Shown: positions 52,038 to 60,597 of the stretch, piece after piece
Position numbering within the stretch: position 1 is the first letter of the stretch
Layout: every line of letters begins with the position of its first letter
From: Cyanophora paradoxa CCMP329
Lineage: Eukaryota > Plantae > Glaucophyta
Direction: 5' to 3'
DNA: 64,000 nt
Assembly: GCA_004431415.1 (NCBI GenBank)
Contig: QPMI01000451.1
Span: 66,091-130,090 of the forward strand
The notes under the pieces: model-generated
Told to the model about the DNA's origin: nothing
Seen by the model: only the letters and a program-made list of their open reading frames with translations
Databases searched by the model: none
Made by a program: the position numbers and the translations under genes

Positions 52038-53432
52038 ATGGCGCCGAAGCAAACAGGCAGCTCCAAAGATGAGGGAAAGGGCCCGCGCTGGCTCTCCAGC
52101 AATCCGAGCAAGCGTTTTGGCGAGCTCTTCGTCCTGGCGTACACGCCACTCTGGATTGGCGCGGTCGCCGTGCTTGTCGCGTCGCGCCAATACGAGGCGC
52201 GCGCAGCACCCAGCTTGCCGCGGGCGGGCCCCGTTTCGGTCTGGCGCGGTCTGACGCGCGCCGCAGAACTTCAAGGAGTTCGAGTACTTCGTCTTCGGTT
52301 TCGCGCTGATGGTTCCGTGCTTCATCGGGCCGGTCATTTTTGCAAATCAGGCCGAGCGCTCCATCCCGCTCCTCAAGCGCTACTCCACCAAGGTCATCGG
52401 CGCCCAGTTCACGGCGCAGCGCTTCCGCTGACCCCGCGTGCAGTCGAATGTGTGGATCTTCATCATGAGCTGGATCGGTGCGGCCCGCTGCGTGCGCGCG
52501 GCGCGCGCGCGGGTGACCGACCCGCAGGAAACTACTTCTGGACGCACTACTTCTACAACCTGCTCGGCGCCAAGTACACGTTCCCCTCGTACCGCATCAA
52601 CGACGTCCGCCCGCCCGCCGGCCGGCCGCCCGCGCGCCGCGAGCCGCGGGGCGACGCGAGCGGGCCGGGGACAGGTGCCGCTGGTGTGCATCTGGCTCAC
52701 ACACGCGTACTTCCAAACGTACCACGTCTTCACGAACATGGCCCTACGGCGCGGCGGCCCCGCCGCTGCGAGGCGAGCGGGCGGGGCTGACGGGGCGCAG
52801 GCGGTGGTACACGTCGGGGGCGTACCGGGCGGTGCCGGGGCTGGTGGCGACGGCGGGGACGTGGGTGCTGGTGGGGGCGATGGCGTACTTCACGGCCTTC
52901 ATGGAGACGTGGACCATCTCCGAGTTCCCCTACTACTCCTTCGTCAACCGCGACCTCATGTACAAGGCCCGCCCCGCCCCCCGCCCCCCGCCCCTGCCCC
53001 GCCCCGCGGCGCCGGCGCGAGGCGCCTCTCGCAGGTCGGTTCGGCCTTCTACGCCATCTACTTCATCGTCTCCTTCCCCATGTTCATCCGGTGCGCCCCC
53101 GGCCCCCTCCCCGACCCTGTTCGCCGGCCTCCGCGAGCGGGGCGCAGGCTCGACGAGCGGCCGGGCGAGTGCTGGACTATCTCGCAGACGGCGATCGACT
53201 CCTTCGCCTGGTGCGCGGCGCGTGGGCGGCAGGCGGGGGCGGTGTGGGGAGGCGGGGGCGGGGCCGACGGGGCCGGCCGCAGCTGCATGATCGTGACCTG
53301 CATCCTCGACGCCTGGCGCCTCGTCGTCGGCGGCATCGTCCCCTCCGTGCCGCCCCCGCACCCCGCTCCGGCCCCCGAGCCCTTCTCACCCCCCCGCAGG
53401 CTAGGATCAAGCACTGCCTTCCCTTCGTCTAG
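52038..53432 (+). CDS. CPI1: Cycloeucalenol cycloisomerase (cyclopropylsterol isomerase), 10 exons
   Basis: WLSSNPSKRFGELFVLAYTP, NVWIFIMSWIGNYFWTHYFY, AYFTAFMETWTI, GSAFYAIYFIVSFPMF, MIVTCILDAWRL. Confidence 0.95.
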
Positions 53433-53909
53433 CACTGCAGCCCTCGCGCGCGCTCGCGTCGATGTCGATCGATATCGATATCGCGACGTCCGCGCGCCAG
53501 CCAATCGAAAGGCTCGAGTAGGAAACCTTGAGCTCGCTTCCGCTTCGATCACCGTGGCACTTGAACAGCCAGGCATGCGCGCGAAGCAACTGGCAATGCT
53601 AAGCTAGATCATGAGCTGCATGGGTCAATCCCCCGCCCGGGCACATGCAACGAATCGCTCAAAGAATTTGGGTCATGTGCGATGCTTGCAATTGCATCTG
53701 CATGTGATCGCTCAGAATTTGATTTGCCTCTACCCGTTCCGTACTTCTCCCCCGACACGAAAGTTTGCCGCAGCGTGGTCCTCCCACACCTCTGTGATTG
53801 TTTCAGCGTTCAGCGTACCACTTTTGCCGCTTTGCGGGCTAGCTCGCTTGTTCCCGGAATAGTACCGGGATGGGTCGGCCGTGATTCGGGCTGCAAGCTG
53901 CCGCACAGC

Positions 53910-56900
53910 ATGAGACCAGCTCAAAAAATTGTGCTGGTTGCGCTGGCGCTGCTCGCCTTGCGCGCGGCGGCCTACCCGGTGCCGATTGTGACCTTCGGGT
54001 CCACCGGCAACGCGCTGTACGAGGGCGAACGTGCGTGAAGCTTAGCTGCCGCCCAGCGCGAGCATATCCACTCCCTGAGCCCCGCTGCGCGCAGCTGTGA
54101 CCATCGACGCCTCGCGCTCGTTCGACGACGCCGGCGGATCGCTGCTCTTCACGTACGACTTCGGCGATGGGACGAGGAAAGGGCCGACGAGCGAGAGCAC
54201 GTGCGCTGGCCGCTCGCTCCCCGCCGCCCGTGCCGAGCCTGGGCGACGGGGCCGGCAGCGCGGTGCACACGTACAAGCGGGCCGGGGCGTACGAGCTGCA
54301 GGTGGCTGTGAGCGACCGGGCGGGGGGCGGGCTGCTTTCGGGGGACGGGCGGCCGGCGCCTGTGGCGCGCCTCGCGGTGGTGGTCGACCCGCACGTCGAC
54401 GGCGGTGCGCGGGGCCGCCGGGCGGGGGGCGCCGCCGGAGCCGACGCGCCGCAGGCTGCTACGATTTCTACCTGACGGCCGACCTCGCCGCCGAGCCCCA
54501 GCGCGGCGCCCCCGTCCTCCTCCCCGCCGCCCGCACCTCCACCCTCTACCTCCAGGCCCGCCCGGCGCCCCGCCGCTCCCGCCGCGCCCCTCCCGCTTGA
54601 CTCGGCGCAGGTGGTGGACTGGCGGGAGCCCGGGCGGGCGGCGCGGGAGCGGCTGACGCGGCTCTTCGACCTCGGGGGCGAGCGGCCGAGCGTCGCCCTC
54701 TCCAACCACTCCCTCGCCGTCGTCGCCCAGCCGGGCCTCAACGTCGTCCGCCCGCCCCCCGCACCCGTCCCCGCCGGGGCGCGTGCCGACGCGGGGCAGG
54801 AGGAGGGTGCGGGGGCGTGGGTGGTGGAGGTGGCGGCGGGGCCGGTGGTGGAGGACGTGGTGGCGAGCGTCGCCCCGCGCGGCGTCTCGCTCCTCGGCTG
54901 CCGCGTCCAGGCCACCCGCATCGTCCTCGCCGTCGACCGCCTCCCCCGCCCCTTCGAGACCGCCCTCGGCCCCGCCGTACGCCCCCCGGCCCGCCCCGGC
55001 CCCCGCCCGCCCCTCACCCCCCGCAGGAGTGGCGCTCCCTCGCGGAGGAGGCGCGCGCGGCGGCCGCGGGGGCGCGGGCGGCGGGCGGGCGCCGGAGGGG
55101 GCGCTGCGGGTGGAGCAGGACGCGTGCTCGCCGTCGGCGGCGGTGGCTCTGCTGCCGCTGGGCGCGGGCGCGGGGGCCGCGGCGGCGCTGGTGACGGCGG
55201 ACGGCTTCGGGCGGCGCTCGCGGCTGGTGCGGCTGCGGCCCGGCGAGGCCGTCCACGAGGCGCGCCTCCTCGCCGGCCGCCTCCTCCTCCTCGCCGCCTC
55301 CGGCCTCTACGCCTCCCAGGAGCCCGCCGCCGCCCCCGCCGACGCCCCCGTCGCCCTCACCGCGCTCGAGGGCCCCTGGGGCGGGGCGGCGCCAGCGAGC
55401 TTCGGGCCGGAGCGGGCGCGGGTGTTCGGGGCGACGGCGTGCCGGAGCCCCGTGCTAGAGGATCAGACAAGCTTCCTCTTTGCGGCGTGGACGCCCCCCG
55501 GGGCGCCGGCGGGCGCGCTGACGGCGCTGGCGTACGCGCCGGTGCTGCCGGCCGCGGGGAGCCCCGCGTGGAGCACGGTCTCCTTCCCCGCCTCCGTCGC
55601 CGCCCGCTTCCCCGCCGGCTACCGGTGCCCGCCCCGCCCCGGCCCCGCGCCGCCCGCGCAGGGGCGACGGGGCGCAGGGTGTGGGGCGCGGTGCGGCTGC
55701 GGGACCGGCGGGCGAACCTCTACCTCGTCGCCGACCAGGCCGGCCTGTCCGCCCTCGCCGTCACCCACACCCCTCCTCCCCGTCCGCCCCGCCCCCGCCC
55801 CCGCCCCCGCGCCCCCCGCGGGGAGCCCGACGGGGGGCTGGGCGCGCAGCGGACGACGGAGCGGTTCAGCGTGTTCGCGTTCCCCGCGGGGCGGGCGGTG
55901 ACGCACCTCGCGCTCCACGCCGCCGGCTTCGTCGCCCTCGCCGCCGGCCCCGGCGGCCTCTGGCAGTCCTCCTCCGCCGCCGCCTTCCGCCCCGCCGGGC
56001 CCGTCGGCGCCCCCGTGCGCGCCCTCGTGTCGACCCCGGCGGCGCTGGGGTACGCGCTGCTGCTCGAGGGCGGGGCGGTGCTCTACGGGCGGGCGGGGTG
56101 TCCAGCGTGGCCCTGCTCCAGCGCGGCTTCGCGGAGAAGCTCGGGCGCCCCGGGGCGCGGCGGCTGCCCCGGGGGCCCTCGCCTTCGACGCCCTCGGCAC
56201 CCTCCGCCTCCTCGAGCTCGACCTCGACGGTCCCCGCCCGCCCCGCCCGCACCCGCCCCGCACCCCGCCCCGCCCCGCCCCGACCCGCCCCGCGCAGCCT
56301 CCGAGCCCTGGGGGGCGGTGCGGAGCTGGCCCCTGCCGGTGGAGTCGCTGCTGCACACGCCGAGCGTCGCGGGGCGCGTCGCCCTCACCCCTCCTTCCTC
56401 TCCGGCTCCGTCCAGGCCGCCCGCCCCCGCCCCCCGCCCCGCCCGCGCGCCCCGGCGGCCTGACGCGGCGGCAGCTCTTCCCCGAGGGGGCCCTCTCCTC
56501 GCGCTACGCCGCTGCGGGGGCGGGGGCGGGGCGGGGGCCGCGACGGCTGCCTTCGGGGAGTCGGAGGCGGGGGCGCGGCTGGTGGGCGCGGGGGGCGCCT
56601 CGCTGCTGCTCACCGCCGTGGAGGCGGCCACGGGGGTCGCCACGGGGAGCGTCCAGGGGAGCCTCCCCTCGTGCCGCCCCGCCGAGTGCCCCGCCCTCCT
56701 CTCCCCGCTCCTCCCCGCGGCGACCTCGCCCGCCCCGGCGCCCTCGTCGCCCTCGCCCTCGCCAGCCCCGCCCCGGGCTGGCTCCCCTCCGACGTCGGTC
56801 CGCCCGCCCCGCCCGCCCCGCCGCGGCGGCTGAGGCGGGGCCCGGGGCAGGGCGGAGCGTGCTGGCGTGGGGGGCGGCGCTGCGGGTGACGGCCTTCGTG

Positions 56901-58994
56901 GGCCCCGCGCAGGCCGAGGCGGTCGTCGTGCAGGCGCCGCCCTTCGCCCTCCAGGCCGCCCTCGCCCCCGCCCTCAACGGCACCCTCGCCCCGCTCCCCG
57001 CCGGCCAATGGCACCTCGTCGACCTGCGCGGCTACCGCGAGGAGGCGGCGAGCGGGACGCAGAACCTGACCCTCGCGGGGGCCGGCCCCGCCCTCACCGC
57101 CTCCCTCCCCGCCGGCTTCTTCGCCTTCCGCCCCGCCGGTGCGCCCCCGGCCGGCGCCCCGCCCCGGCCCACTCCCCGACGAGGCCGGCGCAGACGTGGG
57201 CAAGGTGCTCGCCGCCGGGGGCGGCTGGGGCGTGGTGGTGGAGTGGCGGAGCGGGCGCGAGGTGGGCGTGGCGGCGTGGCAGGCGATGGCGGCGGGGAGC
57301 TACCGCCCCGGCAACTGGAGCATGTACCGCCTCGACTTCGGCGCCGACTTCGCGCCCCTGCCGCACGCGTGCGCCACCCCCGGCCCCGCGGCCGGCGCAG
57401 GGGCGGGGGCGACGGGGCGGCAGGGAGCGGGAGGCGGTGTGGCGGGTGGAGGCGGGCCCGTGCCCGTACGCGGCGCTCCGGGACGAGGCCGGCCCCGTGC
57501 GCTACCTCGACATCGGCGAGCGCACCAACTTCACCGCCTTCGCCGCCCCCGCCCCGTCGAGCTCCTCCTCGGGCCCGCCCCAGCCCCGCCCGCCCCGCCC
57601 CGCCGCCCCGCGGCGAGCGCTGAGACGGGGCGGGCGGGCAGGGTCTCGAACCCCGGGGACTTCGCGGTGGAGACGCGGGCGGTGCGGGGCGTCGCGGGGG
57701 GCCTCCCCGGCCGCCTCCTCGCCGTCTCCGTCGCCGAGCGCGGGCCCTCCGCCCTCGGCGCCGCCGCCTTCGCGGTGGGCCCGCGCGGGCCACCCTCCGC
57801 TGCCCGCGCCGGCCGCCGCCGTGCACGTCGTCGCGGGGTGCGACCCGAGCAAGCGGCTGCAGCAGACGCCCTTCGCCCGCGACGTGCGCGCCCGGGGCCG
57901 GGCCGGGGCGGGGCGGCGGGGCGGGGCGGGGCGTGAGGCGGGCGCAGGCGGCGCTGCGGCTCTCGGAGGAGGACTTCCTGGAGGGAGCGCGCAGGCGGAC
58001 GGCGTCGCCCTCGTCGAGCGCCTCCCCGCCAACTACCGGCCCCCCTCCAAGCTCGGCCGCGGCATCCCCACCAACGACCACCTCTACGCCGCCGACCCCT
58101 CCAAGCCCCGCTACTTCGACGTCTACGAGGTCAGCCGCTCCTCCGGCCGCCTCAAGCAGTGCGCCGGCAAGGCGAGCCGCGCCGAGTGCGGCTGCACCCG
58201 CGCCATGCGCCTCTCCCAGCGCGCCGCCTTCTCCGACTGCATCGACCGCGTGCGCCCCCCGCCCGCCCCCCCACCCCCCCCCCCCCCACCCCCCGGCGCG
58301 GCGCCATGCGGCCGAGCGGCGGGCGGGGCGCAGGTGCTGCGGGTCTTCCAGGGCGGCGAGTTCGTCCCGAAGCTGGAGCTCTACACGGACGCCGCCGGCG
58401 TCCAGCCCCTCCGCCTCGTCTACCAGGCCCGCCCCCCCACCCCCCCGCCCCGCCGCCCCGGCGGCCCCGGGCGAGCCGGGGCGCAGCTGACGGAGCTGAA
58501 CGGCCGCGACGACTGGACGGTCAAGGGTGGCGCCGACGGTGCGGCGCACCGGCCCCGCGGGGGCGGGGCGCGCCTCACGGGCGGGCAGTGTCGCTCTCGG
58601 ACGCGAGGAACTACGACCCGCTGGGGTCGCCCCTGCTCACCCCCAACTCCACCGCCATCACCTTCAAGGCCCGCCCCGCCCCTCGCTCCCACCTGGCCCC
58701 GCCCCGGGGGCCGACGGGGCGCAGGGGATCGAGCTGTACCACTTCCGGGCGCGGGTGGCGGGCCCCACGAACTGCCACCTCACCACCGAGTTCATGGCGC
58801 GTGGCCGCCCCGCCCCGCCCCGCCGGGGGCAGCGCGGGGCGGGGGCGAGCGGGGCGCAGGTATGGTCGTACGGGGCGCAGCTGCAGTCGAGCCTGGGGTG
58901 GGTGACGATCTCGGTGACGGGCGTCGCCATCGCCCTCCTCCTCTTCGGCGTCTACCTCTACCACGTCCGCATCCACGGCGCCCGCTTCGTCTGA
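53910..58994 (+). CDS. CATSPERB: CatSper channel auxiliary subunit beta homolog with N-terminal PKD domain (type I membrane protein)
   Basis: Signal peptide; PKD motif IDASRSFD...TYDFGDG...HTY; VVAGCDPSKRL; LPANYRPPSKLGRGIPTNDHLYAADPSKPR...GRLKQCAGKASRAECGCT...AFSDC; ELYHFRARV...CHLTTEF; single C-terminal TM helix. Confidence 0.85.
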
Positions 58995-59576
58995 CCCCGG
59001 CCCCTCTTCCCCCGCCTCCCCAACACGAATCGTGATGATCCATGAACGCAATAGCACGGGAAAGCTGAGAGGGCGAGGGGCCCTGGGGGGATCCCGGAGG
59101 AGGGGGGAGTGTGTGTGTGCTCCGGTACCCCTAGGGGCCCGGTTTATAGTCGTCCCCCTCACTCCTTCCCCGGTTTGACCCGGGCCCCTACGGCGTGAAA
59201 GCCAACAGGGGGGAGCTCCTCCCACATGTAGGAGGCGGGGGAAGACTTCGCAGCTAGCTTATAGCTTAGGCTGCAAGTTAGGCAGGTTACCTGTGGGGCA
59301 TAAGCACTGGTAGCTCTCATGTTTTCAGCAGCCTTTCCACCGTGGCACTGCAATGTGTACGTGCGTTCCAGATCTAGAGGGCTGTTTCTGGGGGTGGGTT
59401 GTTCCAGCACACGTGTGCTTGCTCGTCATCATTCGGCGTCAGTTTCCCCCTGCACTGCGGCATATCCTGCATCGCGAGTGACCACTGTTATTTTTGAGCT
59501 CCTTAGCCTCCTCCAGTGCTCAGCCAGCTAGCTATAGGAAGCCCTGGAGGGGGGCCAGGGGGGTAGAGGCTGAGCA

Positions 59577-60597
59577 ATGTTCGTCGCGGCTGCAGGCCTT
59601 CGAATTCCCGGGAGTCTGCACACGCGCTCGCGCGAGCAATTGCAGTGCTTTTCTGTAGCGATTCGTGATCTAGAGCCTGGTCGACGGGCCGGCGCGCTGG
59701 ATCAAGTTGCCCGCTGCCAACGTTCAGAGGTCCGATACAAAGCCTCCTCCGCCTGCTTTCCTGACCCGTGGAAAGTTCCTCGGCTCGACGCACTCTCTTG
59801 TACGGCGCTTCTCGAGCGAGTGCCGTGGCACGCCGGCACCAGCACTGCGGGAAATGACAGTCCAGGCGGCAAACGGCGCTTCCGTGCCGCTGAAAGCTGG
59901 TGCGACCCGCGCGGCCGCCCTTCACCAAAGAGCCTAAAGGCGCCGCCCCCGGCCCACGATCCGTAAAAGCTAGCTAGCTGACCTCGCGCCAAAATGCAGT
60001 CCCCGCAACAGAAGAAAACTTCGCTCCGTACGGGCAGGTGCTCAGCTTATCTTGTCCTGATGCATACGCACCTGAAATGCAACGCGCTGTACAGCTCATC
60101 GCAGTCGGCGGCGATGAAGCGGCGCTCGATCTGTCCGCTGGGAAACCCCGCCTGTGGCTCATGCGGATTGACGGATCTCGCGGAATGAATTTCAACAAGA
60201 TCACACACCACGCGCGCGTTACACAGGTGCGGTCGAGGGCCGCGCGCGTGCACGTATACGTACTGCGGCGGTCCTTAAGCGTCTCTGGGGCAGTGCCTGG
60301 GCTCGACGGACGGGCGGCCCTGGTACATGGCGGTCGTCCCGCCGGGGGAGCATCCGACGCACGAGAACCTGCGAGCCTTCCGCATTCCGGGCGGAGCGTT
60401 CATCAAGCTCGAGCGGGGGACGTGGCACGCCGGGCCACACCTCACGGGGGACGCCATCGTCTTCTACAATCTAGAGCTGGAGGACACGGTCCGTTCTAGT
60501 TCGTGCTGCTCCGGTCTAGATCGATCTGACAATGTATCAGAATGATAACGACCACACGACCGTCGAGCTGGGTGCTGATTTCGAGATCCTGGAGTAA
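59577..60597 (+). CDS. Ureidoglycolate lyase/hydrolase-like cupin (plant/cyanobacterial type) with transit-peptide-like leader, 5 exons
   Basis: Spliced VPATEENFAPYGQLI, LDLSAGKPRLWLM, ITHHARVTQCLG, AFRIPGGAFIKLERGTWHAGP, FYNLELEDTNDNDH; stop at 60595-60597. Confidence 0.85.

What the first reader, a model, noticed from the sequence alone, without database searches (positions are those of the whole stretch)
53910..58994. Homolog of the sperm channel subunit CatSper-beta in an alga-like protist, with a PKD domain
The block LPANYRPPS.LG..IP..D..Y.ADPSKP...G..KQCA....R.EC.CT....S...AFSDC (about 58020-58250), ELYHFR...C.L..EF and the terminal TM helix match the CATSPERB C-terminal ectodomain as I recall it. 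CatSper parts are known from a few flagellated unicells, so presence alone is not wholly new. However, a full-length beta subunit next to plant-type genes implies an ancient multi-subunit flagellar Ca2+ channel. The N-terminal PKD/Ig module (about 54095-54320) is not part of the animal subunit as I know it, and may add an adhesion or sensing role.
Basis: partly seen in the sequence, partly recalled or inferred. Interest (0 to 1): 0.8.

Follow-up and report, generated by a model that had tools for sequence, protein, structure and literature searches.

The report
CatSper-beta gene in a glaucophyte alga
The freshwater alga Cyanophora paradoxa transcribes an intact, full-length relative of CatSper-beta, a helper subunit of the animal sperm calcium channel, and similar genes occur in many distant single-celled eukaryotes, so this "sperm" protein is far older than animals.

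Summary

- **Gene:** window 53910-58994 (+) holds one 21-exon gene. Spliced RNA-type contigs from two studies cover it in one piece, so the PKD exons and the CATSPERB_C exons are on one transcript.
- **Product:** about 1,302 aa. The order is signal peptide, PKD, CATSPERB 1st domain, beta-propeller, head, Ig-like, stem (CATSPERB_C), one TM helix and a 10-aa tail.
- **Homology:** Pfam CATSPERB_C scores E 5e-32 on exon 16 alone and 6e-48 on the public model. The family profile aligns with animal CatSper-beta over 962 columns (E 8e-82). An AlphaFold model matches mouse CATSPER-beta of the CatSpermasome best (Foldseek E 4e-44).
- **Frameshifts:** the apparent frameshifts are homopolymer undercalls of the assembly, not gene decay.
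- **Public model:** EukProt Cyanophora_paradoxa P013612 is distorted by those errors and fused to the next gene.
- **PKD domain:** it is absent from the animal proteins compared here. It is shared by relatives in a malawimonad, Diphylleia, an ichthyosporean, a chytrid, Provora and Carpediemonas, so it looks ancestral.
- **Not tested:** pore subunits, complex formation and flagellar location. The scan noted other CatSper-like genes elsewhere in this genome (gamma, epsilon, tau, ARMH2, CATSPER2-like); these are unchecked first-reader notes.

Verdict: a new member of a known kind.

The parts
53749..59069 (+). Whole transcript as covered by spliced RNA-type contigs (5' UTR from at least 53749, 3' UTR to about 59069)
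   Evidence: X1 record 1 is 4,145 nt. Its pieces run from 53749, and bookkeeping of record positions puts the end near 59069; 161 nt 5' UTR + 3,909 nt CDS + 75 nt 3' UTR = 4,145 nt.
53910..54030 (+). Exon 1: start codon, signal peptide (about aa 1-21, 53910-53972) and the first PKD strand
   Evidence: hydrophobic stretch, Kyte-Doolittle 1.99. GT..AG intron 54031-54094 is seen in three RNA contigs.
54095..54404 (+). Exons 2-3 (54095-54200, 54259-54404): core of the PKD domain
   Evidence: One search gives two complementary half-matches (profile 21-46 and 37-74). PKD 2.5e-10 and PKD_4 6.7e-12 on P0031 aa 31-99. PKD domains of clostridial collagenases, E 2e-4 to 1e-3; family HMM 22-47 and 54-96.
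54455..54976 (+). Exons 4-6 (54455-54555, 54611-54745, 54800-54976): linker and the counterpart of the CATSPERB 1st domain
   Evidence: P0031 aa 167-265 aligns with Latimeria beta aa 80-165; colinear HMM hits 104-211. Exon lengths sum to the 559 nt required by the contig.
55027..56415 (+). Exons 7-10 (55027-55624, 55678-55781, 55850-56229, 56298-56415): beta-propeller (counterpart of CATSPERB 2nd domain) and linker
   Evidence: aligned with animal beta aa 165-497; exon 7 piece E 5.6e-14 and exon 9 piece E 4.8e-6, both colinear; all-beta secondary structure.
56475..57368 (+). Exons 11-13 (56475-56797, 56851-57138, 57194-57368): counterpart of the CATSPERB head domain
   Evidence: P0031 aa about 640-885 aligns with Latimeria aa 520-695. 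E 7.2e-13 and 1.7e-9. Weak Pfam CATSPERB_head hits in the Chlorokybus, Diphylleia and Chromosphaera relatives.
57424..57883 (+). Exons 14-15 (57424-57572, 57642-57883): counterpart of the CATSPERB Ig-like domain and the start of the stem
   Evidence: aligned with Latimeria aa 685-830; weak colinear BLASTP hits to animal beta. HMM 876-914 and 979-1008.
57948..58796 (+). Exons 16-20 (57948-58249, 58334-58426, 58487-58538, 58589-58668, 58725-58796): stem, i.e. the CATSPERB_C domain with the LPxNYRPPS motif and four invariant cysteines
   Evidence: E 5.4e-32. E 5.9e-48; 7eeb_E and 9ubw_E, E 3.6e-31; invariant columns. E 4.3e-49 for exon 16.
58860..58994 (+). Exon 21: end of the stem, single TM helix, 10-residue cytosolic tail, stop codon
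   Evidence: Kyte-Doolittle 2.27. HMM 1208-1249, E 2.4e-8. The contig runs on into the 3' UTR.

Best explanation
The locus is the Cyanophora paradoxa ortholog of CATSPER-beta. It encodes a type I membrane protein of about 1,302 residues.

In mouse, the single TM helix of beta anchors it to the pore subunit CATSPER4. Its ectodomain joins delta and gamma in an extracellular canopy that is needed to assemble the channel. Its propeller links neighbouring channels (PMC13484710, PMC12799140).

The most likely reading is that the algal protein does the same job for a CatSper-type Ca2+ channel in the membrane of this biflagellate's flagella. The N-terminal PKD domain would then be an extra module on the ectodomain.

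Shown here: gene structure, transcription and splicing, full-length sequence and fold homology, and wide distribution across eukaryotes. Inferred: membership of a channel complex, flagellar location and control of flagellar beat.
For: - **Expression:** spliced contigs in three runs of two studies cover all 21 exons. The CDS is an exact multiple of three once the reported single-base insertions are counted.
- **Domain match:** CATSPERB_C scores far above Pfam's cutoff. By sequence it matches the solved mouse beta chains 7eeb_E and 9ubw_E at E 3.6e-31.
- **Full length:** profile-profile alignment with animal beta gives probability 100, E 8.1e-82, 962 columns. Of 31 unaltered exon pieces, 23 hit a family HMM built without the Cyanophora row, in strictly colinear order.
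- **Fold:** the AlphaFold2 model has pLDDT 77.6 and pTM 0.73. Foldseek ranks beta first (9ubw_E 3.5e-45, 7eeb_E 3.8e-44, TM 0.52-0.59). The other three large 7EEB chains follow far behind (H 4.7e-23, G 2.3e-12, F 2.8e-10).
- **Native gene:** 50-84 nt GC-rich introns, six of them GC-AG, and a deep, unresolved position in the tree outside animals.
- **Leads, unchecked:** first-reader notes report gamma-like (two), epsilon-like, tau-like, ARMH2-like and four CATSPER2-like genes elsewhere in this genome.
Against: - No pore subunit and no other canopy subunit of Cyanophora was examined here. The notes on them are unchecked.
- There are no localisation, proteomic or physiological data.
- The structure was predicted from the public model P0031, which carries about 150 wrong residues. 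Those stretches have pLDDT below 50.
- The runs are labelled RNA only as a guess. The argument that they are RNA rests on the removed introns.
- Outside the stem, identity to animal beta is low (Foldseek alignments 14%, hhalign 17-20%).
Confidence: 0.6

Rival explanations
1. It is a true CATSPERB-family protein that works without a CatSper pore in this alga. It could be a surface receptor or adhesion protein using its PKD and propeller ectodomain, or a helper of another channel type.
For: Only the beta subunit was verified here. PKD domains commonly mediate extracellular protein or carbohydrate contacts; the closest solved PKD domains are in collagenases and an endoglucanase. Earlier notes of the scan report other Cyanophora channels with large ectodomains (unchecked).
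Against: The TM helix and the stem, which contact the channel in mouse, are the best conserved parts. First-reader notes list several other CatSper components in the same genome.
Confidence: 0.3
2. It is a decaying pseudogene: the window shows about a dozen frame changes inside the coding region.
For: In the window the reading frame changes at 12 places within 3.9 kb of exon sequence.
Against: - All nine located sites lie at the edge of a run of two to four of the same base (C or G).
- All three RNA-type runs carry the extra base at each of those sites.
- At the two sites spanned by a listed contig of the older run X17, that contig carries the extra base too.
- With these bases the CDS is 3,909 nt with no stop, and conserved residues such as the C...CDPSK pair reappear.
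Confidence: 0.03
3. It is animal contamination or a recent transfer from an animal, suggested by 57-59% identity of exon 16 to fish and brachiopod beta.
For: The best single-exon hits are animal proteins.
Against: - GC3 is near 1.0, the introns are typical of this genome, and the neighbours are native genes.
- Outside the stem, the nearest relative is a malawimonad protein that shares the PKD domain.
- Animals form their own starred clade without it.
- The high identity is confined to the nearly invariant stem motif.
Confidence: 0.02

Closest known systems
Mouse CATSPER-beta (chain E of PDB 7EEB and 9UBW, the CatSpermasome)
   Same: - Same order of domains from the 1st domain through propeller, head, Ig-like and stem to one C-terminal TM helix and a short tail.
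- The stem motif and its cysteines are conserved.
- It is the best structural and sequence match.
   Different: - The algal protein has a cleavable-looking signal peptide and an extra N-terminal PKD domain.
- Identity is low outside the stem (Foldseek alignments 14%, hhalign 17-20%).
- It is expressed in a unicellular alga in which, to my knowledge, no sex has been described.
- Its partners are unknown.
PKD-bearing CatSper-beta homologs of protists and early fungi: Gefionella okellyi P0066, Diphylleia rotans P0081, Chromosphaera perkinsii P0055, Carpediemonas membranifera P0070, Provora TZLM1/TZLM3, Polyrhizophydium stewartii
   Same: Same overall layout, PKD plus CATSPERB ectodomain plus TM helix, at about 1,300 aa. 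N-terminal similarity to the Cyanophora protein reaches E 2.5e-16.
   Different: They are only 20-29% identical. Some carry automatic names (the Carpediemonas and Hondaea proteins as CatSper beta, the Polyrhizophydium one as 'PKD domain-containing protein'). I found no paper in the held library on any of them.
Chlorokybus atmophyticus Chrsp12S02047 (P0086)
   Same: It is the only other Archaeplastida member I could name. It has CATSPERB_C at E 2.2e-31, a weak head match and a weak PKD-like N-terminus.
   Different: It is 26% identical to the Cyanophora protein, its PKD is degenerate, and the two do not group together with support in the tree.
CATSPER gamma, delta and epsilon (the other canopy subunits; taken to be 7EEB chains F, G, H from their lengths)
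   Same: Same general plan of propeller, Ig-like domain, stem and TM helix. They are significant but much weaker fold matches.
   Different: Foldseek E-values are 20 to 35 orders of magnitude worse than for beta. P0031 has no Pfam CATSPERD-E_C hit.

Membership tests
CATSPERB (CatSper auxiliary subunit beta) | CATSPERB_C (PF15149) above Pfam's gathering score | tested here: met
   111.6 bits on exon 16 alone and 163.9 bits on P0031, against a cutoff of 27.
CATSPERB (CatSper auxiliary subunit beta) | Stem motif LPxNYRPPS and the conserved cysteines (KQC...C.C...SDC) | tested here: met
   N, Y, P, P and one Cys are invariant across 70 family members including this protein; R, S and the other three Cys are nearly invariant there and invariant in the 17-sequence protist alignment. 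The motif is read directly in exon 16.
CATSPERB (CatSper auxiliary subunit beta) | Full-length colinear ectodomain: 1st domain, propeller, head, Ig-like, stem | tested here: met
   hhalign probability 100, E 8.1e-82, 962 columns. The mapping covers P0031 aa 167-1245 against Latimeria aa 80-1061. Exon pieces are colinear on a family HMM built without this protein. Pfam's own models for the four N-terminal domains do not reach significance on this protein.
CATSPERB (CatSper auxiliary subunit beta) | Fold closer to beta than to gamma, delta or epsilon | tested here: met
   Foldseek gives 9ubw_E 3.5e-45 and 7eeb_E 3.8e-44, against 7eeb_H 4.7e-23, G 2.3e-12 and F 2.8e-10. The model was built from the imperfect public protein P0031.
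CATSPERB (CatSper auxiliary subunit beta) | Single C-terminal TM helix with a short cytosolic tail | tested here: met
   The hydrophobic stretch VTISVTGVAIALLLFGVYL is followed by about 11 residues and the stop codon. It aligns with the TM region of the mouse chain.
CATSPERB (CatSper auxiliary subunit beta) | Physical association with CatSper1-4 pore subunits and the other canopy subunits | not testable with these tools
   No tool here can search the rest of this genome, and none gave me a pore-subunit query. Only unchecked first-reader notes exist.
CATSPERB (CatSper auxiliary subunit beta) | Location in the flagellar membrane | not testable with these tools
   This needs proteomics or tagging.
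PKD domain (PF00801 / PF18911) | Pfam score above the gathering score | tested here: met
   On P0031 aa 31-99: PKD 40.6 bits (cutoff 23.5) and PKD_4 45.7 bits (cutoff 27). Single exons score below the cutoffs at 16-19 bits. The AlphaFold model has pLDDT about 80-93 over this part.

The most novel reading that the evidence does not exclude
Vegetative cells of an alga with no known sex express a near-complete CatSper-type complex: beta plus the gamma, epsilon, tau, ARMH2 and four pore-like genes noted elsewhere in this genome. CatSper would then be a general flagellar Ca2+ channel dating to the last common ancestor of eukaryotes. It would not be a sperm channel that arose near the animal-fungal lineage. 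Its ancestral beta subunit would have carried an outward-facing PKD domain that animals lost.
Probability: 0.45. Interest if true: 0.65.

Novelty: new member of a known kind. Interest (0 to 1): 0.45.

Why it matters
- **Origin of the channel:** reviews differ. One places CatSper in the ancestor of apusozoans, animals and fungi (PMC7935092). Another places it at the root of eukaryotes (PMC5362262, citing Cai et al. 2014, which I could not read). Beta homologs in a glaucophyte, a streptophyte alga, a malawimonad, a metamonad, CRuMs, Provora and thraustochytrids favour the older origin.
- **Literature gap:** I found no paper in the held library that links CatSper with Cyanophora, glaucophytes or Chlorokybus.
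- **Practical use:** CatSper has resisted heterologous expression (PMC5362262). A culturable flagellate that transcribes the gene in ordinary cultures could be a source of native complex and a system for studying what the canopy does.
- **Annotation:** the public protein model for this gene is wrong in several stretches and fused to its neighbour.

Tried and rejected
- **Pfam on raw open frames of the middle region:** no hit. The homology there shows only with family profiles.
- **Word search with the 785-aa open frame 54476-56830:** nothing, probably because out-of-frame GC-rich words swamped it.
- **Word search with the Chlorokybus stem:** only itself. I therefore make no claim about other green algae or land plants.
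- **First splice-chain enumeration:** no solution, because the read tool had cut pieces at repeats, not at introns. A second enumeration timed out. I solved it by hand from splice sites, frame and exon-length bookkeeping.
- **Tree with the mixture model:** did not finish. The LG+G4 quick tree was used instead. Its deep branches are unresolved, so I draw no sister-group conclusion.
- **The look-up of encoding contigs for two unnamed relatives:** gave accessions but no organism.
- **Cai et al. 2014 (PMC4169769):** not held.
- **Explanations rejected:** pseudogene, contamination and animal transfer (see rivals).
- **Not attempted:** Complex prediction, because no partner sequence was available.
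- **Joined protein:** Searches were done exon by exon by reference, and the public model P0031, returned by a tool, stood in for the joined protein.
Full report
**Organism and setting.** The window is extremely GC-rich, about 80% across the gene. Earlier notes of the scan named the genome as Cyanophora paradoxa. I confirmed this. Exon 16 is 100% identical to EukProt EP00741_Cyanophora_paradoxa_P013612, gene tig00020703_g13141.t1, here P0031.

**The observation.**
- The ATG is at 53910 and is followed by a signal-peptide-like stretch.
- A PKD-like module lies in 54095-54404.
- The LPANYRPPS...KQCAGK...CGCT...SDC block lies in 57983-58249.
- ELYHFR...C.L..EF lies in 58725-58796.
- A terminal hydrophobic helix precedes the stop at 58992-58994.
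- Pfam gives CATSPERB_C at E 5.4e-32 for the exon 16 frame alone. The two PKD halves give weak, complementary matches.

**Gene model from reads.** I laid contigs of four public runs on 53700-59200, 5,501 letters, within the limit the operators set.
- Runs X1, X3 and X6 come from two studies. Their contigs lack the introns, so they must derive from spliced RNA, although the tool labels them RNA only as a guess.
- X1 has a single 4,145-nt contig that starts at 53749 and runs through every exon into the 3' UTR.
- The tool listed only part of the joints. It had also cut pieces at three repeats. I completed the model from splice sites, reading frame and the requirement that exon lengths add up to the contig positions.
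- Result: 21 coding exons and 20 introns of 50-84 nt, 14 GT-AG and 6 GC-AG.

**The frameshifts are assembly errors.** The RNA contigs carry nine single-base insertions relative to the window.
- Each insertion sits at the edge of a run of two to four of the same base (C or G).
- At the two sites spanned by a listed contig of the older run X17 (behind 56094 and 57982), that contig carries the extra base too.
- Three more extra bases are required by the contig length. Two are in exon 8 and one is in 56475-56547. All three lie in stretches the tool skipped as repeats.
- The sum is 3,897 + 9 + 3 = 3,909 nt, which is 1,302 codons plus a stop. With 161 nt of 5' UTR and 75 nt of 3' UTR this equals the 4,145-nt contig.
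- The frame changes are therefore homopolymer undercalls of the assembly, not gene decay.

**The public protein model is flawed.** P0031 (1,426 aa) agrees with my exons 1-6 and most later exons.
- It works around the assembly errors by skipping coding sequence or reading introns and wrong frames.
- It replaces the true C-terminus with the next gene, a ureidoglycolate-lyase-like protein at 59776-60594.
- The stretches that AlphaFold left at pLDDT below 50 coincide with these wrong parts.

I searched the exons by reference. I used P0031, a sequence returned by a tool, where a joined protein was needed.

**Family membership.**
- On P0031, CATSPERB_C scores E 5.9e-48, PKD 2.5e-10 and PKD_4 6.7e-12, all above Pfam's cutoffs.
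- By sequence, the solved structures that match are mouse beta chains 7eeb_E and 9ubw_E, E 3.6e-31 over the stem and TM region. Clostridial collagenase PKD domains match the N-terminus.
- An exhaustive phmmer search of 1.84 billion cluster representatives with exon 16 found only 163 proteins at E up to 0.001. This is a small family.
- Source names for 30 of these hits, together with the animal hits, show the following spread:
  - animals;
  - the ichthyosporean Chromosphaera;
  - chytrid, blastocladian and monoblepharid fungi and Rozella;
  - Thecamonas;
  - Diphylleia (CRuMs);
  - the malawimonad Gefionella;
  - the metamonad Carpediemonas;
  - two Provora species;
  - the thraustochytrid Hondaea;
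  - the streptophyte alga Chlorokybus.

**Is it full length?**
- A 17-sequence non-animal alignment headed by the Cyanophora protein aligns with a 15-sequence vertebrate alignment at probability 100, E 8.1e-82, over 962 columns.
- With coordinates of the first rows, P0031 aa 167-1245 matches Latimeria beta aa 80-1061. This runs from the 1st domain through propeller, head and Ig-like domain to the stem and TM helix.
- To avoid circularity and the faults of P0031, I built a family HMM without the Cyanophora row. I searched it against 31 unaltered exon pieces of the window. Twenty-three hit, in strictly colinear order from HMM position 22 to 1249 of 1278. Those E-values refer to that tiny set of 31 pieces.
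- An AlphaFold2 model of P0031 aa 22-1215, made with a 70-sequence alignment, reached pLDDT 77.6 and pTM 0.73.
- Foldseek against the PDB ranks mouse beta first: 9ubw_E 3.5e-45 and 7eeb_E 3.8e-44, TM 0.52-0.59 over more than 1,000 residues. The other three large chains of 7EEB follow far behind.
- It is therefore beta, not merely a member of the wider canopy-subunit group.

**The PKD domain.** The first roughly 160 columns of the non-animal profile, covering the signal peptide and the PKD domain, have no counterpart in the animal profile.
- Pfam finds the same domain at the same place in Gefionella, Diphylleia, Chromosphaera and an unnamed metagenome protein.
- In Chromosphaera it precedes recognisable CATSPERB 1st, 2nd and head domains.
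- An HMM of this module also finds it in Provora, Carpediemonas, chytrids and, weakly, Chlorokybus.
- The simplest reading is that it is ancestral and was lost on the animal line. Its function is unknown.

**Origin.** A quick maximum-likelihood tree recovers animals, fungi and thraustochytrids as starred groups. The Cyanophora protein sits on its own deep, unresolved branch, closest by path to Gefionella. Together with the native intron type and codon bias, this excludes contamination or recent transfer from animals.

**Mechanism.** In mouse, beta binds delta and gamma at the canopy roof and anchors to CATSPER4 through its TM helix. The beta-delta contact is needed for the whole channel to assemble (PMC13484710). 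Loops of the beta propeller form the beta-beta contact of the zigzag arrays (PMC12799140). The stem and TM region are the best conserved parts of the algal protein. I therefore think the same role in a CatSper-type channel of the flagellar membrane is the most likely function (about 0.6).

This is inference. I could not search the rest of the genome, and I had no pore-subunit query. First-reader notes of this scan report gamma-like, epsilon-like, tau-like, ARMH2-like and four CATSPER2-like genes on other pieces of the genome. None has been checked.

**What is known.**
- CatSper subunits outside animals have been published. Allomyces, Thecamonas and Aurantiochytrium were screened by Chung et al. 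(PMC5362262, citing Cai et al. 2014).
- Databases already name the Carpediemonas and Hondaea proteins CatSper beta.
- The Cyanophora gene is in the public annotation, although badly modelled.
- A review places the origin of CatSper in the ancestor of apusozoans, animals and fungi (PMC7935092). The distribution found here argues for an older origin.
- I found no paper in the held library that connects CatSper with Cyanophora, glaucophytes or Chlorokybus, apart from a channel survey that merely searched the Cyanophora genome.

**Verdict.** It is a new member of a known family in a new major lineage, with an ancestral PKD module and a corrected gene model. The claim of a working multi-subunit channel remains open.

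Noticed in passing
window 55082, 56094, 56166, 56387, 56712, 57551, 57779, 57808, 57982, plus three unlocated sites in 55748-55823 and 56475-56547: The assembly lacks one base at each of about 12 short C or G runs (two to four bases) within 3.9 kb of coding sequence. RNA-type contigs carry the extra base at all nine located sites; a listed contig of the older run X17 carries it at two of them. Apparent frameshifts elsewhere in this genome may be the same artefact.
   Followed up: yes
window 59776-60594: The downstream gene is ureidoglycolate-lyase-like (Pfam PF04115, E 2.2e-8). In the public protein model P0031 it is wrongly fused to the CatSper-beta gene in place of the true C-terminus.
   Followed up: partly
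window introns 54556-54610, 56416-56474, 57573-57641, 58427-58486, 58669-58724, 58797-58859: Six of the 20 introns are GC-AG, mostly with the donor GCCCGCCC. All introns are 50-84 nt and very GC-rich. This agrees with the first-reader note on frequent GC-AG introns in this window.
   Followed up: partly
window 54339: A contig of the older run X17 carries an extra G in a G run inside exon 3. The RNA contigs and the window lack it, and it would break the frame. It is probably an error of that run.
   Followed up: no
window 58116-58299: The summed contig depth of run X17 jumps to about 11,600 in this bin. The bin covers the 3' part of exon 16 and the start of the C-rich intron 16 (58250-58333). 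This suggests a widely repeated low-complexity motif.
   Followed up: no
window 52438-53607: The upstream open frames on the + strand contain hydrophobic, membrane-protein-like stretches, but gave no Pfam match as raw frames.
   Followed up: partly
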